The notes below the pieces were generated by a model. The model had not been told where the DNA came from, did no database searches, and worked only from the letters and a program-made list of their open reading frames with translations. DNA of 64,000 bases from Isurus oxyrinchus (taxonomy: Eukaryota). Shown piece by piece: positions 3,825 to 60,938 of this stretch. Made by a program: the position numbers and the translations under genes. Position 1 is the stretch's first letter, and each line of letters starts with the position of its first letter. The stretch is from NCBI GenBank assembly GCA_026770705.1, contig JANJGN010000031.1, positions 1,178,001 to 1,242,000 on the forward strand. The letters are read 5' to 3'.

Positions 3825-4450
3825 GAGATGAATGGCCTCCTAATCTTTTCCATCAGAGTTAAGAGGCTGAATGACCGCCAGCTATTCCTGTGTACGAGCC
3901 TCAATAGATGTACTGGCCTGTCTCCGTTCCTATATAATAGGCTCATAACGGCCTAAGTGACCTCCTGCTGTTTCTGTGTAATAGGTGCAAGGGGGTGAAT
4001 GGGCCTCTTTCCGTTCCTGTGTAACCAGCTCGGGGGGGGGGGGGGTGGTGGGAGGGTGGTGAATGACGCCCTCTACTCGATTTTTAACAGGGCTGAGTAG
4101 CCTTAATGGGCCTCCTTCCATTCCTAAATAACTGGTACAAAAAGGAACTTTACTTCGGCGACGGGACAAAGTTAACAGTTTTGGGTAAGTCGACCCTGTT
4201 CCTCCTGTTGACCAAATTGTACGTCAATATGCGGTTAAAAATCGCCAGGGCTTCTGCTTGGATATGAGAGATATAAAGCTAGGAGCTGCTTACATAGGCT
4301 GAACTTTCATTCCTTTCAATACACAACATTGATGTTTGATATAATCGAGGCGTTTAAATAAATTAAACAAGAATGCCCTCTTCCTGCTCCTAGACGAGAA
4401 GATCCAGGGGATGAATGGCCATCAGTTGTAACTGTGTAAGAAGCCCGAGG
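3825..4450 (+). repeat. degenerate ~45-bp tandem array (unit like aacaggctcgaggggctgaatggcctcctcctgttcctgtgt), interrupted by a J-segment copy
   Basis: repeated gaatggcct...ttcctgt motifs on both sides of 4145-4367. Confidence 0.6.
4145..4184 (+). pseudogene. TRBJ: orphan J-beta copy without RSS (ELYFGDGTKLTVL), upstream of D
   Basis: 4145-4367 matches 5937-6159 with no indels and about 9 mismatches in 223 bp; donor gtaagt at 4185; the heptamer and first 8 coding nt of the source J are missing. Confidence 0.9.
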
Positions 4451-4509
4451 CGCTCAATAACGTTCTGCGACGTACCTAAGGTCTTACAAGCTTTCGAAAC
4501 CTCAATCTC

Positions 4510-4578
4510 TAATCACGTAACGGGATGAAGAGGCGGGGCCTTGCACTGTGTGAGTTCGCTTTTTGTATGGGTATAAAT
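4510..4578 (+). promoter_or_regulatory. candidate D-beta germline promoter
   Basis: CRE-like tcacgtaa 4513-4520, GC box gaggcggggc 4530-4539, TATAAA 4572-4577 inside the 5' RSS spacer. Confidence 0.55.
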
Positions 4579-4585
4579 TACCGTG
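4558..4585 (+). other. 5' D 12-RSS
   Basis: nonamer gctttttgt 4558-4566, 12-bp spacer, heptamer taccgtg 4579-4585. Confidence 0.93.
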
Positions 4586-4598
4586 GGGACAGGGGGGA
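4586..4598 (+). CDS. TRBD: TCR beta diversity segment GGGACAGGGGGGA (open in all three frames: GTGG / GQGG / DRG)
   Basis: canonical vertebrate D-beta core GGGACAGGGGG flanked by a 12-RSS and a 23-RSS. Confidence 0.97.
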
Positions 4599-4637
4599 CA
4601 CAGTGATAAAATACAATTCAGTCGCTGTACAAAAACC
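4599..4637 (+). other. 3' D 23-RSS (perfect consensus)
   Basis: heptamer cacagtg 4599-4605, 23-bp spacer, nonamer acaaaaacc 4629-4637. Confidence 0.97.
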
Positions 4638-5059
4638 TCAAGGCACACGCCTATCGGAAGATCAGCAGAAAGGCAGTGACAACATAGCGAAAACTTCAAC
4701 ATTTCATGGGGGTAATGGAGGGAGCATCGTCAAGGGCTTTGGCATTGCCCACCGAGGGCATTTTTATGTAAAATGAAAAGTTTTGTGTCATTTATGAAAA
4801 AAAACGGGTACTCTTCAACCTCCCATCTCTTCAATGCTCTGGCCACTATTTATCTTTCAGCCAAGATAAAACAATGACCTAGTCATTTATCACACTGCTT
4901 TTGATGCGATTCCTTGGTGAAATTCGACTCCTGCGTTACCTATAGTAATCACTCCATAAAAACTATTTCGTTGGGCGTCCTGGTGCCTTTATTGGCGCTG
5001 CACTAATGTCTAAGAGACGATGTTTGAATGGTGTTGATGTAAACCGGCCTGCTGATGTG

Positions 5060-5107
5060 CTGGGACAGCGGCCTACTTCGGGAGAGGCACCAAACTAACG
5101 GTACTAG
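5060..5107 (+). CDS. TRBJ: J-beta segment GTAAYFGRGTKLTVL
   Basis: FGxG motif; RSS tgttgatgt(5032-5040)-12-tgatgtg(5053-5059); phase-1 donor gtaaga at 5108. Confidence 0.92.
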
Positions 5108-5689
5108 GTAAGAAAATAAACTTATTTTTTCTCCAAGTACATGCACAACGATGTGTATTCCAGGCGTCCTGCCAGTCTGGACCACTTAAAAATTCAGGCG
5201 CATGTTGGATCACCAGCGAGAAACGTGCCTATTGTGAATGCATCTGTTTGCGCTTTGGTTCAACAGTTAATCCCTGGGACGGAGCTAATATTCCTGTTTA
5301 TTCGCCAGCAATAATAAGTCGTTCTATGTAAAGCCAGAATACTTAGAGATCGCTGCACCAATTGGTTTAATATGAGTGTTGAATCGACCATACAATGAAT
5401 AGAAATATCACTCGTGACTAATCGATAATTCCACTCTTATTTGGTGGTATAGAATTTATAGATCAAAATATGATCCAGAAAGACCAGAATTCAACCTTGC
5501 AGGTCCAGATTGAATCCATAGGATAGAAATAAAACATACAAGTAGGCATAACATTCACTGGTTAACATGGAATCATGTAGACTAGAATGGGCTCCATGCA
5601 ACTGATAACGGATTCATGCAGATTGGATACATGCCAAATGAAAGCAATAGCCGTTTAAAGGCTTTTTGAGGGGATGAGGTGTCACCGTG

Positions 5690-5737
5690 CGACAGATGTG
5701 AATTACTTCGGGCAAGGAACCAAACTAACAGTTCTGG
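5690..5737 (+). CDS. TRBJ: J-beta segment TDVNYFGQGTKLTVL
   Basis: RSS gctttttga(5661-5669)-13-caccgtg(5683-5689); donor gtgagc at 5738. Confidence 0.93.
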
Positions 5738-5928
5738 GTGAGCCTGTGTCTCTTTCATTTCTAGTTTATCTGCCAGGCAGTGATGAATAAGATGTTTAAT
5801 TTTATAAATCGTGCCCCATGAACCATGTGCACTTGCTGCGCGAATGTTTGTCTATTAACGGCGCAAGCTGTCTCACTTGGCAAGGGGCAACCCAGGGGCC
5901 TGTTCATGACTCAGGATTGAGCATCGTG

Positions 5929-5976
5929 CAGGGAATGAACTTTACTTCGGCGACGGGACAAAGTTAACAGTTTTGG
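5929..5976 (+). CDS. TRBJ: J-beta segment GNELYFGDGTKLTVL
   Basis: RSS tgttcatga(5901-5909)-12-catcgtg(5922-5928); donor gtaaga at 5977. Confidence 0.92.
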
Positions 5977-6605
5977 GTAAGACAATCCTGTTCCTCCCAT
6001 TGACCAAATTGTACGCCAATATGCGGTTAAAAATCGCCAGGGCTTATGCTTGGATATGAGAGATATAAAGCTAGGGGCTGCTTACATAGGCTGAACTTTC
6101 ATTCCTTTCAATACACAACATTGATGTTTGATATAATCGAGGCATTTAAATAAATTAAAGCAGTTGGTTGCATGGGCTGAGGGGGATTGCTTCTCTGGCC
6201 GGGGAGGGGGGTGGGTGGGGGAGCCCAGAACAGTTTAAATTAGAGCCAGGCCATTCAAGTGTGATGTCGGAGAGTTCTTCATACAGCATCCAGTGACAAT
6301 CAAAAAATCACTTCCTAAAAAGCTGTTGAGAATACTGAGGGTTTGAAAACTTGCAAATCCTTATAGATAGATTGTAGGTAAGCAGAAGTACTGAGAGTTA
6401 CTGAAACGAGACTGGATGAAGGGTTAAGATACATATCGGCCATTATCTATTTGAATGAGGAACAGGTTTGAAGGGCTGAAAAGCCTACTAATGTACCCCT
6501 GTTCCTACGTCCCTTAATGGTCATTAATTTAATAGAAGATCCGATAAAATAGACCTAACATTCCTGGCTTGAGGTGGATTTTTGCTATAGCCCTGTACCA
6601 TTGTG

Positions 6606-6655
6606 TTCTGCTAGTGAAGCTTACTTCGGAAGTGGGACAAAACTGGTCGTGTTCG
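6606..6655 (+). CDS. TRBJ: J-beta segment SASEAYFGSGTKLVVF
   Basis: RSS gatttttgc(6577-6585)-13-cattgtg(6599-6605); donor gtaagt at 6656. Confidence 0.93.
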
Positions 6656-8016
6656 GTAAGTGAATACATTTCTAATACTGAAGAAAGTTGTTGCAATTCA
6701 TGAATTCATGCGGGGTGGGAGAGGGGGTGAAACTACAGGTAATATCGGTGAATTAATTTCAACACTTCAGCTTACTAAGGCAGAATCGCGACCATTGCAT
6801 TCACCTCACTGTTGGAAATTAGTCTGAGAAAGAACAGAAGGTAGGATCTCCCAAATATGCAGAACAAACAACAATATAGATGCAAACAGAATGGTTTGGT
6901 CAATGAAGACAGAACAGTAAACAGAGGCCACATCTATCAAACTAAAAATGTCAGAATGAACTGTTATTTGCGCACTTTTAGCCTACATATTATAAAGTAA
7001 GTAGCAGAGGCATTAGATACAGTTGAAATATTAACAAGGATGATTGTAGAGCTGAGGGGTTATAACTATCAGGAGAAATTGAACGGGCTGGAGCTCAGGG
7101 GTGACCTGATAAAAATTAGAATGATGGAAGAGGTATCGATGGGACAGATGTAGAGAAGAGCTTTCCACTTGTGGGGAGACCAGAAGTAAGGGATGGGGGC
7201 ATCAATGTAAGATAGCCCCTAATATATCCAATTGGGAATTCCGGAGAAACGTTTTACCCCAGAGAGTGGTGTTAACTCGCTACTACAGAGTTGAGGCGAA
7301 TAGCGTAGATGCATTTAAAGGGGAAACTGTATAAAGGCATGGGCGAGAAAGGCATCGAACGTTATGGAAACTCATATTCCCCACTGACCTGTAACAGTAA
7401 TGAAATAATACCATTTAGAGGCCATGTATTTTAAAGTTACCAATCGAAATCGATAGTGTTCTTGAGCTATGGTATCTGTGCACCCTGAGGCGTTCAAGGG
7501 TTGAATTAACTTTCCTCTTTACACAAAATGATACAGCGGTTAAAAGAGTCACATTTTGACAACAGGCTCCTTCAATGAGATTTGTAATATATTAAGTATC
7601 GGTGATTAAGGGATGGTAAAATTGTTGTGTTTAAGTTGATTGTCAATAGGGGTAGATAGCAATCAGCTATTTGCTCTGGTGTGGTGGGTGCTGAACAAGG
7701 GGGTAAAATCCTAAAAGTAGAGACAGACCGTTCGGGAGTGATGTCAGGAAGCATTTTTTTTCACAAAAGGTCGAGTGGAATTCTGTACTTGGCTCCACCA
7801 GAAAGTTGTTATGACTAGAGGAATTGGGGAGGGTGTTCTCAATTGAAAATTTAAAATGTCTGATTCATTGATTTTTGTTATGCAAGATCATTAAAGATTA
7901 TTGATCAACATGTTCCTAGATCCTATGTGCCTCTGTTGCCCGTTGTTACACATAATCCCCTAGGGACACGAATCGCAAATAGCTGAGGTGTCTTATAACA
8001 GGAATTAACATTTGTG

Positions 8017-8066
8017 CTCTGCTAACATCTATTATTTTGGAGCTGGGACTAAAGTGACTGTTTCTG
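8017..8066 (+). CDS. TRBJ: J-beta segment SANIYYFGAGTKVTVS
   Basis: heptamer atttgtg 8010-8016, weak nonamer tgtcttata at 12-bp spacing; donor gtaaat at 8067. Confidence 0.88.
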
Positions 8067-8104
8067 GTAAATTAAATTTACATAAGTGTAAATTGATATA
8101 TATG

Positions 8105-8245
8105 AATGAATCGTTTTATCAAATATCTACCTGTCTGTCTGCATGCCTGTCTATCTACCTACCTAGCTACCTGTCTGCCCATCTGTCTGTCTGTCTATCT
8201 ATCTATCTGTCTGTCTATCTATCTATCTACTTGCCTACTTGTCTG
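8105..8245 (+). repeat. (TCTA/TCTG)n tetranucleotide microsatellite
   Basis: visible tctatcta/tctgtctg runs. Confidence 0.85.
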
Positions 8246-8294
8246 AACATCTGTACATCACCGCTGTGTTTTGGTACTGTTGCTTAGTATAGTG

Positions 8295-8348
8295 CAAACG
8301 GGTACAACCCTCTGAATTTTGGGGAAGGGTCTAAGTTAACGATTTTAG
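8295..8348 (+). CDS. TRBJ: J-beta segment NGYNPLNFGEGSKLTIL
   Basis: RSS tgttttggt(8267-8275)-12-tatagtg(8288-8294); donor gttagt at 8349. Confidence 0.9.
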
Positions 8349-8663
8349 GTTAGTATGATTCCTTTTTTCCCAATGAAGCAAGAATCGCGTGTTTGAATCA
8401 GAGCTGAATGCCTAATTGAGGAATATAGAGGAAATCTCGTACTAGTCAGGAGTATACCTTAAAACACTGACATACAGGGGCAGATATAGATAGACAGGAG
8501 GTATTGAGAATGCATTTCATTTTAATTGGAATGCATTTAATTCCAAGTCATTTCATGAGTTTGCATTAGCTTGTGGTAATCTCATGTGAACTAAATGTGT
8601 GGGGCAGTGCGTTTTGCCAGGAGGCTGGTGAGGATCGTTTTTGTGAAGTGACATGATGGCGTG

Positions 8664-8720
8664 TGAATAATAGTAATCAACCCTTGCACTTTGGAGATGG
8701 CACTAAGTTAACTGTTGTAG
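8664..8720 (+). CDS. TRBJ: J-beta segment NNSNQPLHFGDGTKLTVV
   Basis: RSS cgtttttgt(8636-8644)-12-tggcgtg(8657-8663); donor gtaagt at 8721. Confidence 0.93.
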
Positions 8721-9589
8721 GTAAGTGAGTTGTTGATCAAGATGTATCAATTTTTTTTCTCAATGTGCATTGAAACACTCGACTAATTTATTCTAATCAA
8801 TTTAAAGCTAAGAGAGACAGTATGAAATTTGGAAAAAGACTAAACATTGTATTAAAGAAGTAGTAATTACAGTAACTACCTGGACATAACGAAAAAGATA
8901 GGCAGGGTTGAAGGGAGAGTGAGAGAGGAATTGGCAATCATATACATAGAACGAATGTAAGGACATAATGAATAAGAGCAGGAGAAAGCCATTCGGGCCT
9001 TCCAGCCTGCTCTGCCAGTCAGAAAGAATATGTCTGACCAGACCTTGACTCAATTCCACCTTACGCCGTGTTCCCCATAATCCTTGACTCTCCTATAGTT
9101 CAAAATCTGTGTAACTCGGCCTTGAATGTATGCAATGGCGCTGCTTCCCAAGCTCTCTGAGTTAGAGAACTACAAAGATTTGTGACTCTGCAAGAAAATA
9201 AGTTCCTCCTCATGTTCGTTTCAAATGGGTAACTGCTCATTCTGAAATTAATCCCCCAGAGTTTTAGATTCCGCACGAGGAGAAACATCCTCTCCCCTGT
9301 CATGCCCTATTCCAAACCGTCTATGGTTTATTAAAATCTCCTCTCATCTTTCCAAACTCCAGATCCAGAGGGAATTTAGACAGCACTGTGGGAGGTTCGG
9401 AAATTAGAGAGATAAAACTTGGAGGGGAGGGGTGGTGGTCAAAGACGACGAGAAAAGGTATAGCAAAGAAGAAGATAAAGTACAGTAGGGCGGGATACAA
9501 CGCACTACAAAATGATCAAACCTTATTCATTAGCGAACATGTACAGAGTTGAAGAGGCACTAGTTTTCTTATAACCGTTTAAATTAGTG

Positions 9590-9641
9590 TCAGGAAGCTA
9601 TGATTATACATTTGGTATTGGTTCAAAACTCATGGTTTTGG
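9590..9641 (+). CDS. TRBJ: J-beta segment SGSYDYTFGIGSKLMVL
   Basis: RSS agttttctt(9562-9570)-12-attagtg(9583-9589); donor gtgagt at 9642. Confidence 0.9.
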
Positions 9642-11844
9642 GTGAGTTATATTGAGTTGACTTGGCACTTCTGATTAAAGTGGTATCAGAGAGAAAAATT
9701 TCAAGAGGACTTATAAAATAGGATGATTGCGGGAAAATATCACATAAAATGGGATTCTAATTATTGGAATTTAGATGGTTAAGGGGCGATTTCGAGATAT
9801 TTAGGGTAAATGATAGGGCAGATAGAGAGAAACTATTTCCATAGATTGGGTATTCGAGAACTCGGGGGTCCGATCGGGAGTGAAATTGGCAAACACTGCC
9901 ACACGCAAAGGCTATGAAAACTAGAGAAGCTGGAACTGTTCTCCTTAGAACAGAATAGGAAAATGGATGTTTTGACTAAGGTCTGGGGAATAACGAAAAC
10001 TCTGGGTGCAGAAAACAATAAGAACAACTTCCATTGGCAGGAGGATCTGTAACCAAAGGAGTCATGTTTTAGGTCACTGGAAATATATCGCGGTTCCTTT
10101 ACCGTCGGCAGTTAAAAATCCTGGAGCTCCTCCCCTAACAGAATTGTCGGTGCATCTAAACCAGATGGAATGCAACGGTTCAAGAAGGCAGCTCACCACC
10201 AACAAGGGCAACTAGGGATGGGCAGCAATTGTTGGCCTAGCCAGCGAAGCCCACAACTTCTGAAAGAATGGAAAAAGAGGGAATTGGCTAAATGCTTGAA
10301 GGGAAAGGTCAGTTTCCTGCGGTTATATATTTAAGAGCAATGGGAAATTGAAAATTAGGAGATCCTTTTGAACTCAGAGTTGCAAGAATTTTGGGGAGCT
10401 TTATCTGAACTTGAAAACGGAGTTTATGAATAGGTTCGAGTGCGATTTGTACGAACTTAGAAACATAGGAACACCAGAGGTGGATTAAACCCCTCCAGCC
10501 TGTTCCGCCATTCAGTAGGATCATGGATGATTTCTGCCCTAAGACCCAATGCCAACCTTTGCTCCACAATCCTGAATAACTTCTGTTGACAAAAACAATA
10601 TCAACCTCAGACTGAAGGTTGCCGACTAATAGTGGATGAATTGTCTTTTGCGGAAGGGAGATCCGAACTTATTCCATCCTTTGCTTGTACAAGTATTTCC
10701 AATTTCACTCCTGAAATGTCCGTCTCTCTTTGTTAGATAGTGCCTCCGAGTAACAGGGTACCCAATTTGGCAAATAGTTTCTCCCCATCTACCCCATCAG
10801 TTCCTCTCAGTATCTTGAAAGAAACCTCTCAACCTTCTAAGTTCCAATGAATAAAACCTTACTTCCTTCAAACTTTCCTGGTAATACATCCATTGAATCC
10901 CAGATGTGATCTGGTAAATCAGCTGCACTCCTTCGAAGGCCAATAAACAATGATGACTGAGAGGCAGAGTGAACTGAAGTGAAATCAGGTACAGAAACAG
11001 ACATAAAGCGAAGGAAAAAACTAATGTGCTGAGGGAGAGAGAGGGAGCGAAGGAGAGAGAGAGAGAGAGAGACAGAGAGGGGGAAAGAGGGAGAGAGGGA
11101 AAGAGAGTGAAACGAAAATCAATGAAAAAAATAAACATTTAAAAAGTCATCTTATTAACACCACTAAGAACAATTTACCACCTGCAGTAATGGAACATAA
11201 TACGTAATAATTGTTAAATTGCTGGGCCAGCAGGATTGATTTTCACTGTGTTAAGAATTGTCAGGTCGTTAAAACGGTAAACAGTTTGTTCATTATAGAC
11301 TTACCTTTATGTTCGGTGTGTCATCAGTGTTGTTTTAAACTGTTGAATAGTCTAATGCAATGGCCTAATACTCTCCAATATTCCAATCATCAATGAGAAT
11401 ATCATAAATCGATATGTACTTTGGAAAGTATACAGATAATAGCACTTCAAGCCTAATAAGCGGGAAAATGCATTGGGATGTCTAATGTAGGATATAAGAA
11501 TGGGAAGTCCTTCTTGACTTTGGCTGAATTCCTAACCAGTGGAAAGATTCATACGAAGAGGACATTTTTAAATTAATGTTAGGCCATTTAGAAGCGAAAT
11601 CAGGAAACACTTTTTCACAGAAATGTAGGGAGAAATCACTCCATCCCACCCTACCGCCCCGCAAAAAGACAGTGGGTGCTCAGGGTCAAGTGTAATTTCA
11701 AGTTTGAGACGGATAGATTTATGATGGGCGAGAGTATCAAGGAATATGAAGAATAGTAGCGAAGGCTAGAGCGCCTGAATAACCTCTTGATTGGTTCAAT
11801 AGGCTGATTGAGTTAAAGGTTTTGTAAAGGTGTGCAGCATAGGG

Positions 11845-11900
11845 TTGCACAAACGCAAAGAAATTATATTTTGCTCAAGGGACCAAAGTTAGAGCTTTGG
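11845..11900 (+). pseudogene. TRBJ: J-beta ORF/pseudogene CTNAKKLYFAQGTKVRAL
   Basis: nonamer aggttttgt 11817-11825 with 12-bp spacer, but heptamer cataggg has lost the essential GTG; FAQG instead of FGxG; donor gtgggt at 11901. Confidence 0.8.
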
Positions 11901-13033
11901 GTGGGTAAATGTGAAATACGTTGTTGGTTTAAAACACTTGATACACTATTGCTATGTTCTTCAAAACGCCGTTTCTTTCCCATGTCCCACTTAACAATGA
12001 AAATATCATGAATCTCATTACGCCTTGCAAGATTTATAACACATTCATGTGGCATCAGACCAACAAAGAAATGCACTGCGAAGTGTAACAATATATGTTA
12101 TGGTAGACATGTCGTCTTGTTTTGAAATTTGGAGACCTGTATGAGATTTTGCCTCGGGAGAATTATTGGTTAAAGTAGGATCCAGAATAGAGGAGGCTAT
12201 AAGGACTGAACCTAATTGCCTACTCTTAATCCACACTTTATGATCTTCTGACAAAAGCCAGGCGAATATGCTTCAGTTTTTAGCCTTCTTTTGAGCAATC
12301 CCATTCTTGAACAATGTTGTGCAGTTTGATAATATTAAGATCCTGATAATGAGATGTCCTGAAGTGAATATCCATTGTTTGTAATTGCAGAAAATTGCAA
12401 GGCCTAGTTGTTCTTGTTAGAAAATAAATTGACCAATGCGCTGTTAGATTATAGAACCTTACACCCCCCAAAAGGACTTTCGGCCCATCTTATTGTATCC
12501 GGCTCTTTGAAAGAGTTATCAATTTCGTCGAACTCATCCTGTCCTTTCCAAATAGCTGTGTAATTTGCTCCTCGTTGAGTATCATCCAATCCTCTGTTGA
12601 AATTTAGCATTTATCCTGTTTCCAGTACCTTTTCACGTTGAGCATTCCATGTCATAGCAACTGGCTGCTTAAAGAAATAACTCCTCATCAAAACTTCCGC
12701 TCTTTTATCAATCGCCTTCATTTTTTGTTCTCTGCTTACAAAACCTCTGGCTGGTGGAAATATCTTCTCCATAATCTACTCCAACAAAATCCTCCCTGGC
12801 TTTGAACGAGTCCACTAATTGTCCCCTTAACCTTCTCTCGGACAAGAACCTTATCTTCTCCAGTCCCTTTACATAACTGAGCTCCCTCATCCACCATTTT
12901 ATTTAATCTAATTTGCGCACTTTCCAAGGACATGCCATCTTTCCTAAAGTGTGGTGTTTAGAAATTGGTGCGCGACTCCAGCTGGGGCCTAAATTAAGAC
13001 CTAATAGTTTTACCACTGACCTGCAGCATTGTG

Positions 13034-13089
13034 CTAATCTCAGAGCTCGATGTATTCTTTTGGTCCTGGGACTAAGCTGTCAGTTCTAG
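13034..13089 (+). pseudogene. TRBJ: J-beta pseudogene *SQSSMYSFGPGTKLSVL
   Basis: good RSS agttttacc(13006-13014)-12-cattgtg(13027-13033); in-frame TAA 13035-13037; expected donor at 13090 reads AT, and the next GT (13094) is in the wrong phase. Confidence 0.85.
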
Positions 13090-52090: not shown

Positions 52091-52552
52091 TGCCCGCTCA
52101 TGATAGCGAATTTCACATTGTCATCAGTCTCGGCTTCAGTGAAGAGACAAATGTGCTGTGGCCAAATTAGTTGATGAAGTAAAGATATTAGGGAAACCAG
52201 GCTGGGAGGAGGGCACCTTGGCAGCCCCTGCCACTTCCGTGTTCCTGAGAGCTCCAACCCTAACAATATGATAATGCCCCCCGCCCCGTGCATTTTGATT
52301 AACATACACCCACAGCTCCCCACATCCCCCCACCCCCCCACTTCCATCATTCTGATTGCCCTAAGTCTCAGTGACAGACCAGCCTCACCCTCTGTACTAA
52401 GTGTAGTCAATAGTCATCCTGCTCCCTAGCAGTGTGGATAACAAGGCCTGGCGCCCTGAGAGCCATTCGCCTAAAACTGAATGGTTGAAGAAGGCTATCT
52501 TTTAATGATTAGGGGTTTTTTTCATGACGCAGAACTGTTCTCAAGCACTGTG

Positions 52553-53296
52553 CTCCATCTCTAGCTGCACAGTAATAAACTGCTGTGTCTGACCCTTTGA
52601 CGCTATTCAAGCGGAGCTTGGATTTCTTATCCCTCGCAGTTAGGGTGATGGTAAACCCGGCATTAATACCCTTTTTGTAGTTTTCTTGGCTCCCCATCAC
52701 TTTGTACCGGATCAGAGCGAGCCCTTCCCCGGGGCGTTGCCGATATCAGAGCATGGTAGTGCGGGCTGTTTGATTCTGGTAACAGTTCAGTTCAGCAGCT
52801 CGTAGTTCTTTGACGGCGGGTGCATCCGGCCACTGATGCAGCACACCTATCGAGGGACCATCTGCAAATAAATTTCGCACATTATTAAGTAAATGTTAGA
52901 CCAGGCAACCCTAAAGTTATCTTTGAGAAGAAGCTACCCTGTGAAATTAAGAGCAATTTCATTTGTCCCGTAGTGATACAAGCCTTTCCCCTTTTCACCT
53001 ACATATCAAGTCTCATTTTGAAAGTTACTATTGAATTTGCTTCCACTGCCCCTCCAGGCAACGAGTTGCAGGTCAAAACAACTCGCTGCCTGGTGCAAAA
53101 TCCGCCTTATTTCGCTCCCTCGTTCATTTGCCATATGCTTTAATGGCATGTTGTTACGTTCATCTCTTGCTGCGGCTTGTTTGTAAAATGTGCCTTTAAT
53201 AAGAGTCGCACAATTAACCCTACCGAGATGTCAATATGTCCCCTGCTTACATGGTACCAGAAGAAAAATGATGAGGGTGAGACAATCTGAAGGCAT
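52553..53296 (-). pseudogene. TRBV: inverted V-beta pseudogene 3 (single stop at the conserved Trp)
   Basis: leader MPSDCLTLIIFLLVP 53251-53296, donor gtaagc; V exon 52553-52861 VLHQWPDAPAVKELRAAELNCYQNQTARTTML*YRQRPGEGLALI...SDTAVYYCAARDG, TGA 52746-52748; RSS cacagtg(52552-52546)-23-aaaaaaacc(52522-52514). Confidence 0.94.
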
Positions 53297-56975: not shown

Positions 56976-57473
56976 GGGGATCTGTACCCAGCTCCTCCGC
57001 TCCTATTGAGGGAGCAGCTGGAAACACTGGGCCTTCGTTCACAACAAGGCATCTTCGCTGAAAGGCACATAATCTGGTTATATCTTTCATTCTTTCTCTG
57101 TGGGATCTTACTGTGTCCCAAAATTTCAAAAGTCACGAGAGGGTTTTTCTTTGATGGGGAGGTATTTTACCGGTAGATCTATGGAAGAGAATCAAAGTTA
57201 GCGTTTCAGGACAAGGACTATTCTTCCAAACCTTAACTGGAAATGTTAACTCTGTTCCTCTCTCTACAGATGATGCTGAGTATTTCCAGCATTTTTCATT
57301 CATATTTCACATTTCCTGCATCCGGAATATTTTGTATTTTGTTTTATATTATGGGCTGGGGCGTGTCGAGGTTGTGAAAGTGGCTACAGAAATGCAGGCT
57401 CTATCTCTCTTCCATTGCGTTACGAGGTGGTGAGGGTTTTTGAAGGGTCGTTACCCCATACTACACCGCTGTG

Positions 57474-58972
57474 CATCACTTGAGGCACAGAAATACATTG
57501 CCGTGTCTGCAGGTGAGGCGCTCGGGAACTTCAAAGCAGAGTTTCTATCACCGTAACCAGTGATTTCAAACCGGGTTTGTTCCACCACGTAATGGATCGT
57601 ACCTCCGATCCGAATGTACCCGATCAACGTGAAACCCTGACCAGCTGAATGGCGGTACCAGAGCATGGCTTGAGGAGTGGATTCCCGTTCATTGCAGTTA
57701 ATTGTTGCCAGCTCGCCCTCTGCTACCACCAATGTGAGTGGAGTTTGCAGAGGCCGCAATCCTTGCGTTAGATCTAAGAAGAACAATGAAGCGGTTCATC
57801 GAATCTTAATGCAGATTAAGAGCCATTCGGCTATCCGCAATTAAACATCAGTAGTGATGCAAGCACGTGCGGACAGTTTCCACTTTACGCTGGCTTTATT
57901 ATTCATTCAAAAAACAATAAAAACATCAATTTATTTTTGAACCAGTGGAATATTAATCGACGCTTACAACCCCCATTCAGGCGATCATCAAATCCATTGA
58001 CTGAATGTTAGCCGGGTATCAAAGATTAGTAGTTTAGTCTAATCGAATTGTTCATGTCAACACTGATGTTATTTGTAAGAACATAAAATTGTTTCCCGCC
58101 GGCTCTCTATATCCCTTATGCCCTGATAAATCAAACATCTACCCATCGCAGCCTTGAATATACTCAGTAATGCAGGAAATACAACCCTCTGGGTTACAGA
58201 ATTCCAAGTGCTCACAGCCCTTTGAGCGAAGAGATTTCTCCTCACCTCAACCCTAAATGGTCGGCGCCTTATCCCGAGGTGGTTACCCCATGTTATAGAT
58301 TCCCCAGCCAGGAGAATAGAACCTCTCAGTGTATTATCTTTTCAAACCATTTCAGAAGTCTATGAGTTTCAGCAAAATCAACTCTAATTCTTCTAAACAC
58401 TGGAGAGCATATTTCTAAATTATTCAGTATCGGAACACAGGACCTTCCTGTCATTCCAGAGACGAATCCAGTCAACTTTCTCAATGCTGCCTACAATGGT
58501 TCTTTCTAGATGCAAACCAAAATTGGACGCAGTTCTCGTGGTATCGTCTCACCAAGGCCCTGTATAGTCTTAGTTACTTGTGTACACCATTCCCGAACAG
58601 TAAAGGCCGACATTCGATTTGCCTTCCTCATCACTTCTTGTAACGTGGGCGCTAGATTCTGTGTTCCTTGCACAAGTGCACCCAGGTCTCCCGGAATATA
58701 AGCATTTGGAGGTTTCACGCCTCTCGCAAGTGAATAAACTCACATCCCCCATATTATTTTCCCATCTTCTACGTTTTTACCTATTCACTTCACCTGTGTA
58801 TGCCTCTGCAGCTTTTGTCACGCCGCAGCTTACTGAGGAAGGTCTGTATTTTCTCAACAAACTTGGACAGATTTCTCCCGGTCTCTTCGCCCTAGTATGT
58901 AATATAATCGTACGGAGGATACTTATACGGCAGAAGTTGTATAGAGATAAAAGAGATACAACATATTTGCAT
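57474..58972 (-). pseudogene. TRBV: inverted V-beta 4: open V exon but leader splice donor mutated (ORF/pseudogene)
   Basis: V exon 57474-57773 LTQGLRPLQTPLTLVVAEGELATINCNERESTPQAMLWYRHSAGQGFTLIGY...ADTAMYFCASSD with both Cys and the Trp intact; RSS cacagcg(57473-57467)-23-tcaaaaacc(57443-57435); inferred leader MQICCISFISIQLLP 58927-58972 followed by ATAAGT instead of GTAAGT. Confidence 0.88.
58085..58850 (-). mobile_element. decayed CR1-type LINE in the V4 leader intron
   Basis: DLGALVQGTQNL...RKANRMSAF; CR1 3' UTR motifs. Confidence 0.7.
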
Positions 58973-59809
58973 ATTTGGATGGAAAAATGCTAAAATTGAG
59001 GGCTGCAATGAACGTGTCCTCATGCCAAGTGACTCGATTTCTGACTGAAACTGCAGGTCAGTGCAGATATGCACCCAAGACCTACCCCGGAAATGTCGTT
59101 CTTCTAGATGCTGTAGCCACGTTAATGATAAACAGGTGTAACAATGTGCTCCCGTGTGTTTTCCTGGAATTTTAAAGCATGTTGAAATTAGCCTTGGCTT
59201 GGGTGCACACTGCATTGTGAGCCAGCCTATAATCTATATGTAACTTAATAAAAAAGTGCCAGAAAGGTTGCACAGGAGCGTTCGCCATAACCCTTTGAAC
59301 ACAGAGCAGCGTATATCGTTGTAGCTCATTAAGTAGCCGTCTGGCCTCCGGGCGGTCGTACATTAAAGACCGGCCTCAGATACTAGAGTACAAGTATCTA
59401 AGCGGATATTGCAATGTAGAGCTGAGGGCTTGCTGAACTGTCTGTGGGGCAGTATGAAGCGAGTGCAGCGTTTCAGCAGGTTGAGTGCTAAGGCGTCTTA
59501 GGTGTTGACACACAGAATGTTCGGGGAAATATTTTCACCCTTAATTAACAAGATTGAAATGTTGCTATATGTGGGAGTTTATAGCGTAAATTTGAGACGC
59601 TATCTCCGAGATGACAGCAATGCCTGAACTTTAAAATAGCTGATTTATTGGCTATAAGGGGCTTTGGGGGGATGCCAAGGTTATGCAGAGTGGCACAGAA
59701 ACGGCTGATTACGATAGGTCAAAGGGCTGCGCATGTGCAGCCATACCCACAGTGCACATGGTGCCGAGGAGGTGTTGATGTCAGCCTGTGACAAGTTTGT
59801 ACCGCTGTG

Positions 59810-60088
59810 CCAATAGATGGCAGAGTCTGTCAGCTCGGGGTTGTTCAGTTGCAGGGTGAATTTATTGCTTCCAACATCGAGCGGGGCGGCGATTCGCTTC
59901 TCGAAATCGGGCCCAGACATCGTGCCCGCTGCATATCCACTTCATCGCGGCTCCCTCTTTCCGCTACCAAAACATACAGTAGAGAGTCATGCTAGCTCCC
60001 TCCAGACTGCAGCCCAGACTGAAGGGCTGTCCCGGGCGGATGACAGACGCCGATGGAAACTGGACCACAGAGGGTGCAGCTCGAACCC
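59810..60088 (-). pseudogene. inverted V pseudogene 5 with IgH-V-like features, truncated at the RSS
   Basis: PSVVQFPSASVIRPGQPFSLGCSLEGASMTLYCMFW*RKEGAAMKWICSGHDV/GPDFEKRIAAPLDVGSNKFTLQLNNPELTDSAIYW, followed directly by cacagcg(59809-59803)-23-atcaacacc(59779-59771); TAG 59964-59966; frameshift; decayed leader probably about 60995-61049 with donor gtaaga. Confidence 0.88.
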
Positions 60089-60389
60089 CTAGACCAGAGT
60101 TAAAGAAAGAAACACGGCTTAGAAAACAGGATGATCCAGGAAAAAAGGCCATTCCGCCTACCATGACGCTGCTAGCTCTTTAAAAGGACTGTCCAATTAC
60201 TCCCACCCTCTGCCGCTTGCCCTCAGCTCTGCAAATTCCATCTTCACCTTTTAATTATGTACCTATTTAGTTTTTAATCGTATTACAGTTTACATAGATT
60301 CACGCATTTCCCCGTATTTTATCGTCGGTGGAGAATATTTGAGAGGTTAACACTTAAAATAGATCGAATGTCCCACCAATAAGGTAAGA

Positions 60390-60938
60390 CAAAAGCAAAC
60401 AACTGCGGATGCTGCAAATCCAAAACAAAAACAAAAATACCTGGAAAAACTCAGCCGGTCTGGCAGCATCTGTGGAGAGGCGCACAGTCATCTGTGGAGA
60501 GGCGCACAGTTAACGTTTCGAGTCCACATGACTCTTCAACAGAACTAAGTAAAAATAAAAAAGAGGTGAAATATAACTTAGTTTATGTGGGGGGGGGGGG
60601 GGGCAAGAAGAGCTGAATAGAGGGCCAGTGATAGGTGGAGATAACCAAAAGATGTCACAGACAAAAAGGAAGGACACCTTCAACACCTCTTTGTCCTTTT
60701 GTCTGTGAGATCTTTTGGTTATCTCCACCCATCACTGGCCCTCTATCCAGCCTTTCTTGTCCCACCCACCACCACCCCCCCCCCCCCCCCCCCCCCACTT
60801 AAACCTACTTATTTGTCACCTCTTTTCTATTTTTACTTAGTTCTGTTGAAGGGTTATTCGGAGTCGAAACGTTAAGTGTTCTCCTCTCCACAGATGCTGC
60901 CAGACCTGCTGAGTTTTTTCCAGGTATTTTTGTTTTTG
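60390..60938. mobile_element. Penelope-derived inverted-repeat insertion with 12-bp target-site duplication, in the V5 intron
   Basis: aataaggtaaga at 60378-60389 and 60939-60950; the two halves are reverse complements of the Penelope 3' terminal region. Confidence 0.85.

What the first reader, a model, noticed from the sequence alone, without database searches (positions are those of the whole stretch)
59771..60088. IgH-V-like V gene with a very short CDR2 inside a TCR beta locus
Seen: RPGQPFSLGCSLEGASMTLYCMFW*R...MKWI...(Y)GPDFEKRIAAPLDVGSNKFTLQLNNPELTDSAIY. The G-x-S-x-x-x-Y-x-M-x-W CDR1, the (E/K)WI framework 2 end and the D-x-x-x-N-x-F-T-L-Q-L-N-N framework 3 read more like VH or VH-delta than V-beta, and only about 6 residues separate WI from the inferred YG. 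Established: sharks use IgH-type V segments in TCR delta (IgHV trans-rearrangement, TAILV, NAR-TCR), and VH-delta occurs in several tetrapods. These are described for the alpha/delta locus, not beta. Inference: this may be an Ig-like V lineage usable by TCR beta, or a very old V-beta family retaining ancestral VH-like features. This copy is dead, but intact orthologues may exist elsewhere.
Basis: partly seen in the sequence, partly recalled or inferred. Interest (0 to 1): 0.8.

Follow-up and report, generated by a model that had tools for sequence, protein, structure and literature searches.

The report
Dead mosaic V gene behind TCR-beta
A broken variable-gene segment lying backwards behind a shark's T-cell-receptor beta constant gene mixes antibody-heavy-chain-like and T-cell-receptor-like features, but it is dead here and could not be shown to be a true antibody-type gene.

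Summary
On the minus strand at 59771-60090 lies a germline V segment. It has a splice acceptor, Cys23, Trp41, a FR3 ending D-S-A-I-Y and a 23-spacer RSS. It sits in a shark TRB locus 3' of D-beta, ten J-beta and C-beta, among four other inverted Vs.

It is dead. There is a TAG after Trp41, a frameshift in CDR2, no Cys104 codon and no convincing leader.

The VH reading is only partly supported.
- FR1-CDR1 has antibody heavy chains as its nearest solved structures, with the same Cys-Trp spacing. Equivalent pieces of two sister Vs lean to light chains or TCR, and a third gave no V hit.
- The FR3 motif is not VH-specific. A true V-beta and another sister V also rank VH first there, and a fish TRAV-like V scores about as well.
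- FR2 starts TCR-style: W, then a stop one change from Tyr, then R-K.

A sister species carries a version with two extra letters at the frameshift site. These put the FR2 and FR3 frames in register, so the short CDR2 predates that lesion.

The decisive tree could not be built. The scan's earlier notes describe VH-type Vs only in this genome's TCR-delta region.

The parts
60089..60090 (-). Splice acceptor AG after a pyrimidine-rich tract. The V exon starts at 60088 with two bases that complete a codon (phase 1).
   Evidence: Read from the sequence. The reading frame continues as G-V-R-A then A-P-S-V-V-Q.
59967..60088 (-). End of the leader (L-part 2), FR1 and CDR1 up to Trp41. Cys23 is present and Cys23-Trp41 is 15 residues inclusive.
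   Evidence: PDB phmmer: best single-domain hit is a Fab heavy chain (23.3 bits, E 5.3e-4), and none of the 60 rows shown is a TCR chain.
59964..59966 (-). In-frame TAG stop at the residue after Trp41. It is one base change from a Tyr codon.
59934..59963 (-). Rest of FR2: R-K-E-G-A-A-M-K-W-I. A Trp sits where VH has its conserved FR2 Trp. The stretch is one residue shorter than usual.
   Evidence: The comparison with VH and TCR FR2 motifs is recalled.
59912..59933 (-). CDR2 remnant of 22 nt with the frameshift. Some contigs of a sister species carry two extra letters between 59913 and 59914, which put the FR2 frame and the FR3 frame in register.
   Evidence: tables 4 and 8: X8 32.9 of 32.9 depth, X15 40.7 of 118.2, X9 0 of 5.61. 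The frame arithmetic was done by hand.
59813..59911 (-). FR3: P-D-F-E-K-R-I-A-A-P-L-D-V-G-S-N-K-F-T-L-Q-L-N-N-P-E-L-T-D-S-A-I-Y.
   Evidence: PDB best single-domain hits are VH4-like heavy chains at 21-23 bits. Pfam V-set reaches 14.1 bits, below its cut-off.
59810..59812 (-). TGG codon where Tyr/Phe-Cys104 should follow. The coding end with Cys104 is missing. All sister-species contigs stop aligning at 59812.
   Evidence: table 8: records 6, 7, 22, 23, 29 and 30 all end at 59812, with 23 or 9 further letters that do not fit.
59771..59809 (-). RSS: heptamer CACAGCG (59809-59803), 23-nt spacer, nonamer ATCAACACC (59779-59771, 6 of 9).
   Evidence: The intact neighbouring V has the same heptamer variant (CACAGCG-23-TCAAAAACC).
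60091..60241 (-). Upstream region without a convincing leader exon.
- The short ATG ORF at 60241-60200 is not hydrophobic, and its two GT sites (60206, 60200) are out of phase with the V exon.
- Two ATGs (60164, 60152) are in frame with the V exon but read through the presumed intron.
- A run of six T (60146-60141) is eight T in a sister-species contig.
   Evidence: table 4 (AA put in behind 60140).

Best explanation
This is a decayed germline V segment of the shark TCR-beta locus. It is one of five V segments that lie 3' of C-beta in inverted orientation.

An intact copy would work like the mammalian inverted V-beta. Its 23-spacer RSS would pair with the 12-spacer RSS 5' of D-beta, the intervening DNA would be inverted, and the V would be expressed on a TCR-beta chain. 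That mechanism is inferred, not shown.

The segment belongs to a divergent V family of its own, with a mosaic make-up.
- VH-like: a long CDR1, a Trp near the end of FR2 and a D-x-x-S-N-x-F-x-L type FR3.
- TCR-like: a Q-x-P start of FR1 and a W-Y-R-K type start of FR2.
- A CDR2 about 3-5 residues shorter than in its neighbours.

In this genome it cannot make a protein. It has a stop after Trp41, a 2-nt loss in CDR2, loss of the coding end with Cys104, and no usable leader. I read the VH resemblance as retained or convergent features of an old V lineage resident in TRB, not as proof of an IgH-type V.
For: Locus context:
- Ten FGxG J motifs lie on the + strand at 4154-13059, and a C1-set exon lies at about 22.2-22.7 kb.
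- That exon aligns over residues 2-124 with a TCR beta chain.
- A perfect CACAGTG-23-ACAAAAACC site lies at 4599, just before the J cluster.
- The intact inverted V at 57454-57795 ends YFCASS. Its best single-domain PDB hits are TCR beta chains at 46-47 bits.
- A bamboo-shark relative of that V is 70% identical.

V anatomy and RSS.

Own family: tblastn of the three pieces finds no other V in the window (other hits E >= 2.5).

Mosaic make-up:
- FR1-CDR1 aligns without gaps to VH chains. None of the 60 rows shown is a TCR chain, and the rows whose names tell are heavy chains.
- The FR1 pieces of the intact V-beta and of the 47.7-kb V give mostly light chains plus some TCR chains.
- The FR1 piece of the 52.5-kb V gives no V hit.
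- The FR3 ranking is unspecific.

Not an Ig mini-cluster: no D or J with an RSS within 2 kb downstream.

Decay is neutral-like. The sister species differs at 11 of 233 positions in the V, against 11 of 297, 12 of 513, 8 of 370 and 20 of 716 in the flanks (table 8).

The assembly is backed by reads: four runs of the probable source sample hold all 62 sampled words.
Against: - No similarity to any V-beta was found, neither to the Vs of this window nor among the 60 best solved chains. Calling it a 'V-beta' rests on place, orientation and RSS only.
- FR1-CDR1 and the FR2 Trp do point to VH.
- No RNA evidence exists. None of the 20 runs that hold the stretch is on record as RNA.
- No tree could be made.
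- Whether the sister-species version is intact at the stop codon and at the 3' end could not be read, because the table was cut.
Confidence: 0.6

Rival explanations
1. It is a true IgH-type V, of the IGHV / TAILV / VH-delta clade. It was copied into the TRB locus, used there for a time by inversion to D-beta, and then lost.
For: - FR1-CDR1 has VH as its nearest solved class, with ungapped alignment from FR1 to Trp41. The sister Vs do not show this.
- A Trp sits in the FR2 position typical of VH (motif recalled).
- FR3 aligns full-length with VH4-like chains.
- This genome carries VH-type Vs inside TCR loci elsewhere, according to unchecked scan notes.
Against: - FR2 opens W-stop-R-K. The TAG is one change from Tyr but at least two from Val or Ile codons.
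- FR1 starts with Q-x-P.
- The FR3 motif is shared with a fish TRAV-like V and a shark multi-V protein. It also ranks VH first for a true V-beta.
- A VHH (VH3-like) scores only 8 bits per domain.
- There is no D or J of Ig type behind it.
- A passage of PMC12227049 argues that VH joined to TCR-beta would be disadvantageous.
Confidence: 0.2
2. It is a member of another V lineage, alpha/delta-like or an unassigned ancient one, that happens to lie in TRB. Its VH-like and TCR-like traits are simply what a basal V looks like.
For: - The best per-domain match of FR3 in the 1.84-billion-protein library is a cyprinid TRAV-like tandem V (19.1 and 18.2 bits; 44% identity over 34 residues).
- No close relative was found in any family.
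Against: Only FR3 supports it, and VH4-like chains score slightly higher (21-22 bits). The FR1-CDR1 piece does not match that fish V.
Confidence: 0.17
3. It is not a V gene at all but a chance ORF pattern.
For: Pfam gives no hit above threshold for any piece.
Against: - Two independent pieces hit V domains at E below 1e-3.
- The acceptor, Cys23, Trp41, FR3 and an abutting 23-RSS stand in the right order and spacing.
- RSS-like sites are rare: 7 in 128,000 positions.
Confidence: 0.01

Closest known systems
Inverted V-beta 3' of TRBC (human TRBV30 / mouse Trbv31 type; several inverted TRBV in tuatara)
   Same: Place (behind C-beta), opposite orientation, 23-spacer RSS and hence joining by inversion. 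Passages of PMC11754216 and PMC10464911 describe this layout in amniotes, salmonids and some amphibians, with five inverted TRBV in tuatara.
   Different: - No sequence similarity to the other inverted Vs of this window.
- Longer CDR1 and shorter CDR2.
- A Trp in late FR2.
- It is dead here. Whether it falls in the 'inverted TRBV' clade was not testable.
TAILV / VH-delta (IgH-type V segments resident in TCR alpha/delta loci)
   Same: A V with VH-like traits sitting in a TCR locus. FR1-CDR1 is nearest to VH.
   Different: - Those are described for the alpha/delta locus (passages of PMC12227049 and PMC5931798).
- Those have typical VH frameworks (recalled).
- This one lies in TRB, has a TCR-style start of FR2, and its clade is unknown.
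IgNAR / NAR-TCR V domains
   Same: A W-Y-R-K type start of FR2 and a much reduced CDR2 region (both recalled).
   Different: No IgNAR chain appeared among the 60 rows shown for either piece. The candidate keeps a C'-C''-like stretch and a VH-length FR3. Not tested further.

Membership tests
Rearranging germline V segment (V-set) | Leader intron acceptor, Cys23, Trp41 and an FR3 D-x-A-x-Y in the right order and spacing | tested here: met
   V-domain hits of both halves.
Rearranging germline V segment (V-set) | Second cysteine (Cys104) and an open reading frame | tested here: not met
   TAG at 59966-59964, a frameshift near 59913, and TAT-TGG running straight into the heptamer. It is a pseudogene.
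Rearranging germline V segment (V-set) | RSS abutting the coding end | tested here: met
   CACAGCG-23-ATCAACACC. Only 7 such sites occur in 128,000 positions.
TRBV (V-beta) | Lies in the TRB locus, with a 23-RSS able to pair with the 5' 12-RSS of D-beta | tested here: met
   J-beta cluster, C-beta exon and sister V-beta genes. RSS. The 12-RSS of D-beta itself was not examined.
TRBV (V-beta) | Sequence grouping with known TRBV | tested here: inconclusive
   No hit to the window's Vs and no TCR chain in the 60 rows shown. TCR chains are scarce in the PDB, and no shark TRBV set could be fetched.
TRBV (V-beta) | Expressed joined to D-J-C beta | not testable with these tools
   No RNA run holds the stretch, and this copy is dead.
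IGHV / TAILV / VH-delta clade | FR2 starts W-V/I-R-Q (recalled motif) | tested here: not met
   It reads W-TAG-R-K. TAG is one change from Tyr codons and at least two from Val or Ile codons.
IGHV / TAILV / VH-delta clade | FR2 ends G-L-E-W-I/V/L (recalled motif) | tested here: inconclusive
   It reads A-M-K-W-I. The Trp and Ile are present, the rest is not, and the stretch is one residue short.
IGHV / TAILV / VH-delta clade | Nearest relatives are VH domains | tested here: inconclusive
   Met for FR1-CDR1, with controls. Unspecific for FR3.
IGHV / TAILV / VH-delta clade | Falls inside the clade in a tree with shark IGHV, TAILV, TRDV and TRBV | not testable with these tools
   The word searches found nothing.
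IGHV / TAILV / VH-delta clade | [quoted passage not shown] | tested here: not met
   It lies in TRB, with no D, J or RSS within 2 kb downstream.

The most novel reading that the evidence does not exclude
A V family with an antibody-heavy-chain-like front half and a naturally very short CDR2 was recruited to the inverted V cluster behind shark C-beta. It still segregates in a sister species as a version without the frameshift. If that version is intact, some sharks would build TCR-beta chains with a VH-like V domain. A 2025 paper argues that evolution avoided this.
Probability: 0.12. Interest if true: 0.75.

Novelty: new member of a known kind. Interest (0 to 1): 0.4.

Why it matters
V segments of antibody type are known to serve TCR delta in sharks and several tetrapods. 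For TCR beta, which must read MHC, this is thought to be disfavoured (passage of PMC12227049). A VH-like family in the TRB locus, even a dying one, would bear on two questions: how strictly V types were partitioned between receptors early in jawed vertebrates, and what the ancestral V looked like.

As it stands, the evidence shows a dead V of its own family with mixed traits. That is useful for annotating shark TRB loci. It also gives a concrete lead, the frameshift-free version in a sister species, but it does not overturn the current picture.

Tried and rejected
1. Pfam on the pieces gave nothing above threshold. V-set reached 14.1 bits for FR3, and the other two pieces had no family.

2. 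Word-index protein searches with the FR3 piece and with the 52.5-kb sister V found nothing (1 candidate each, none scored). The index seems to hold few vertebrate V segments, so these blanks say little.

3. The big HMMER search with the 44-residue FR3 piece gave 9 hits at E <= 0.001. All had 2-7 matched stretches, and none was a close relative. A single V domain cannot reach that threshold with so short a query, so moderate relatives are not excluded.

5. Fetching the bamboo-shark contig that holds the neighbour's relative (P0010) was the best chance of finding an orthologue 2-3 kb away.

6. Promoter motifs (both recalled). The octamer has 5 matches against 4.5 expected, and the V-beta decamer has 17 against 16.3 expected. 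Neither has a match in the 400 nt upstream of the V exon. This is uninformative.

7. I first thought that the short ATG ORF at 60241 was a phase-compatible leader. Recounting showed that both GT sites are out of phase, so I dropped it.

8. An alternative model holds that a larger deletion just after W-I made both the frameshift and the short CDR2, with frame 0 being the true CDR2 reading. It is not excluded by sequence alone. The sister-species version differs by only two letters in that stretch, which favours a short CDR2 that predates the lesion.

9. Literature. Seven searches listed no paper describing a VH-type V in a TRB locus or a shark TRB locus annotation.
- I read passages only, by 'find', of PMC12227049, PMC5931798, PMC11754216 and PMC10464911.
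- PMC7909615 and PMC3222143 are not held.
- Subscription journals and supplements, including accession tables of shark TRBV, were not visible. A described shark V-beta family matching this one may therefore exist.

10. The joined steps were left out. All searches used the pieces apart.

Full report
**What is there.** The minus strand of 59771-60090 carries a germline V segment.
- After a pyrimidine-rich tract and the acceptor AG (60090-60089), the frame reads G-V-R-A, then A-P-S-V-V-Q-F-P...G-Q-P-F-S-L-G-C-S-L-E-G-A-S-M-T-L-Y-C-M-F-W (59967-60088).
- A TAG follows (59966-59964), then R-K-E-G-A-A-M-K-W-I-C-S-G-H-D-V.
- After a shift of frame it reads G-P-D-F-E-K-R-I-A-A-P-L-D-V-G-S-N-K-F-T-L-Q-L-N-N-P-E-L-T-D-S-A-I-Y-W.
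- The TGG runs directly into CACAGCG, a 23-nt spacer and ATCAACACC.

This is not chance.
- The FR1-CDR1 piece and the FR3 piece each hit V domains of solved structures on their own. The best single-domain chains score 23.3 bits (E 5.3e-4) and 22.9 bits (E 8.4e-4).
- The window holds only 7 RSS-23-like sites in 128,000 positions. Four of them abut the 3' ends of minus-strand V segments, this one included, and one perfect site at 4599 stands before the J cluster.

**Where it is.**
- On the + strand there are ten FGxG J motifs between 4154 and 13059.
- A C1-set exon lies at about 22.2-22.7 kb (Pfam E 9.3e-18). It aligns over residues 2-124 with a TCR beta chain, although multi-domain Ig constant chains outrank it in the PDB list.
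- On the minus strand lie V segments at about 47.7, 49.9, 52.5, 57.5 and 59.9 kb.
- Only the 57.5-kb one is intact. It ends YFCASS, its best single-domain PDB hits are TCR beta chains (46-47 bits), and it is 70% identical to part of a Chiloscyllium punctatum protein.

So this is a shark TRB locus with a cluster of inverted Vs behind C-beta.

**The copy is dead, in four ways.**
- The TAG after Trp41.
- A frameshift in CDR2.
- The missing coding end. T-A-T T-G-G meets the heptamer where the intact neighbour has T-A-T T-T-C T-G-T ... before the same heptamer variant.
- No convincing leader. The only short ATG ORF upstream (60241-60200) is not hydrophobic, and its GT sites are out of phase. The two ATGs that are in frame with the V exon read through the presumed intron.

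Four runs of the probable source sample hold all 62 sampled words of the stretch, so the lesions are unlikely to be assembly slips. The contigs laid from one of those runs left a hole over the V itself.

**The sister species.** Sixteen runs labelled organism B hold 24% of the words, which fits a few per cent divergence. I laid three of them, together with one run of organism A. Over 59812-60044 organism B shows two versions.
- One has 11 other letters and no gap.
- The other has 18 other letters, a pair of compensating one-letter changes in CDR1 (59983, 59986), and two extra letters between 59913 and 59914.
- The second version makes up all the depth in X8 (32.9 of 32.9), part of it in X15 (40.7 of 118.2) and none in X9 (0 of 5.61).

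By hand count, two extra letters at that point put the FR2 frame and the FR3 frame in register. A random indel would have the right size class and fall in the 22-nt gap between W-I and P-D-F only a few times in a hundred (my estimate). I therefore take the frameshift here to be a 2-nt loss.

It follows that the CDR2 region was already short before the lesion. Trp41 to the FR3 Tyr is 53 codons with the two letters, against 56 in the intact neighbour and 58 in the 52.5-kb V.

Two things could not be read.
- Whether that version also lacks the stop, because the table of other letters was cut.
- What lies at the 3' end. All sister-species contigs from both sides stop fitting at 59812, exactly where the coding end is missing here, with 23 or 9 further letters that do not fit (table 8). 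Something differs there, but I cannot say what.

Divergence in the V (11 of 233) is not lower than in the flanks (11 of 297, 12 of 513, 8 of 370, 20 of 716). There is no sign of constraint.

**Is it VH-like?** I used the PDB ranking with controls, because heavy and light chains are about equally common there while TCR chains are scarcer.

For FR1-CDR1, only the candidate ranks VH first.

| V segment | FR1-CDR1 piece: top PDB rows |
|---|---|
| Candidate (59.9 kb) | No TCR chain among the 60 rows shown; the rows whose names tell are heavy chains, the rest scFv, diabody, nanobody or unlabelled Fab entries |
| Intact V-beta (57.5 kb) | Mostly light chains, a few TCR alpha or beta chains, and Roundabout Ig domains |
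| 47.7-kb V | Light chains and TCR alpha |
| 52.5-kb V | No V hit at all |

The candidate's alignments run without gaps from FR1 to Trp41, so the Cys23-Trp41 spacing (15 inclusive) is that of VH. Its three sisters have 13, 13 and 14. The front half is therefore distinctively VH-like within this cluster.

For FR3 the ranking is not specific.
- The candidate's 60 rows shown are again antibody heavy-chain type, VH4-like.
- The FR3 piece of the true V-beta also ranks VH and VHH first, if weakly (16.6 bits or less).
- The FR2-FR3 half of the 52.5-kb V ranks VH first at 40 bits.
- In the library of 1.84 billion proteins, the best per-domain match of the candidate's FR3 is a cyprinid tandem V whose domains end Y-Y-C-A-L, which is TRAV-like by my reading. 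It scores 19.1 and 18.2 bits, with 44% identity over 34 residues.
- Next comes a shark multi-V protein. A camelid VHH reaches only 8 bits per domain.

The D-x-x-S-N-x-F-x-L motif is thus a widespread V feature.

FR2 is mixed. It opens W-stop-R-K. The TAG is one change from Tyr, which gives the W-Y-R-Q/K of TCR, light-chain and NAR domains, but two or more changes from the Val or Ile of VH. It ends M-K-W-I, with a Trp where VH has one (motifs recalled). FR1 begins with Q-x-P, as TCR and light chains mostly do (recalled).

**What it is not.**
- It is not a stranded Ig V-D-J mini-cluster of the kind noted elsewhere in this genome. There is no J motif with an RSS, and no D-type RSS pair, in the 2 kb downstream.
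- It is not a copy of another V in the window. blastn finds only itself, and the other tblastn hits have E >= 2.5.

**Most likely explanation.** This is a relic of a separate, old V family resident in the inverted V cluster of TRB. When intact it would have joined D-beta by inversion through its 23-RSS, like the mammalian inverted V-beta. That step is inferred from place, orientation and RSS, and is not shown.

Its VH-like front half and late-FR2 Trp, together with TCR-like FR1 and FR2 starts, make it a mosaic. I give about 0.6 to 'divergent TRB-locus V, not of the IGHV clade'. I give 0.2 to a true IgH-type V moved into TRB, and about 0.17 to another or unassigned V lineage.

**Comparison with what is known.**
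- Inverted V-beta segments behind C-beta are described for amniotes, salmonids and some amphibians, with five in tuatara (passages of PMC11754216 and PMC10464911).
- Ig-type Vs in sharks are described for TCR delta and possibly alpha (passages of PMC5931798 and PMC12227049).
- PMC12227049 argues that VH joined to TCR beta would be disadvantageous.
- My seven literature searches listed nothing on a VH-type V in TRB or on an annotated shark TRB locus. Much of the shark TCR literature is not in the library, and supplements were closed.

**Verdict.**
- The most useful new fact is the frameshift-free version in a sister species, which makes the question testable.
- The joined steps were left out: no leader-plus-V model, and no single protein across the stop and the frameshift.

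Noticed in passing
window 52512-52895 (-): The inverted V at 52.5 kb has a stop codon exactly at the Trp41 position (ML*YRQ) and an otherwise open frame with a perfect CACAGTG-23 RSS. Its FR2-FR3 half ranks antibody heavy chains first in the PDB (40 bits single-domain), while its FR1 piece hits no V at all.
   Followed up: partly
P0010 (Chiloscyllium punctatum GCC33705.1): The bamboo-shark 'hypothetical protein' is a gene model that fuses the back half of a V ending YYCAWS with the orthologue of the 57.5-kb V-beta. At least two inverted Vs therefore lie close together there too.
   Followed up: partly
window 57494-57645: In the intact neighbouring V-beta, one sister-species contig (X8) differs at 19 of 152 positions over FR2-FR3, against 3 of 167 over the adjoining FR1 part. 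This may be a divergent allele, a paralogue or fast evolution of CDR2/FR3.
   Followed up: no
window 59812: All sister-species contigs from both sides stop fitting at 59812, the junction of the truncated coding end and the heptamer, with 23 or 9 further unmatched letters. The sister species differs structurally at the very site where Cys104 is missing here.
   Followed up: no
window 60296-60500: A very highly repeated element (summed contig depth 1e5 to 1e7 in all four runs) begins about 200 nt upstream of the V exon. It may have displaced the promoter or leader.
   Followed up: no
window 4599 (+): A perfect CACAGTG-23-ACAAAAACC site on the + strand lies just upstream of the J-beta cluster. 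It is presumably the 3' RSS of D-beta.
   Followed up: no
window 54511 (-): A weak RSS-23-like site (CACATTG, nonamer 6 of 9) on the V strand has no obvious V reading upstream. It may be chance or a sixth, more decayed V.
   Followed up: no
P0004 (Chiloscyllium, XP_043552676.1): A 781-residue shark protein, annotated as heparan-sulfate-proteoglycan-like, is a chain of V-J-like domains with a transmembrane tail. Its FR3 shares the D-x-S-x-N-S-F-x-L-T-I motif.
   Followed up: no
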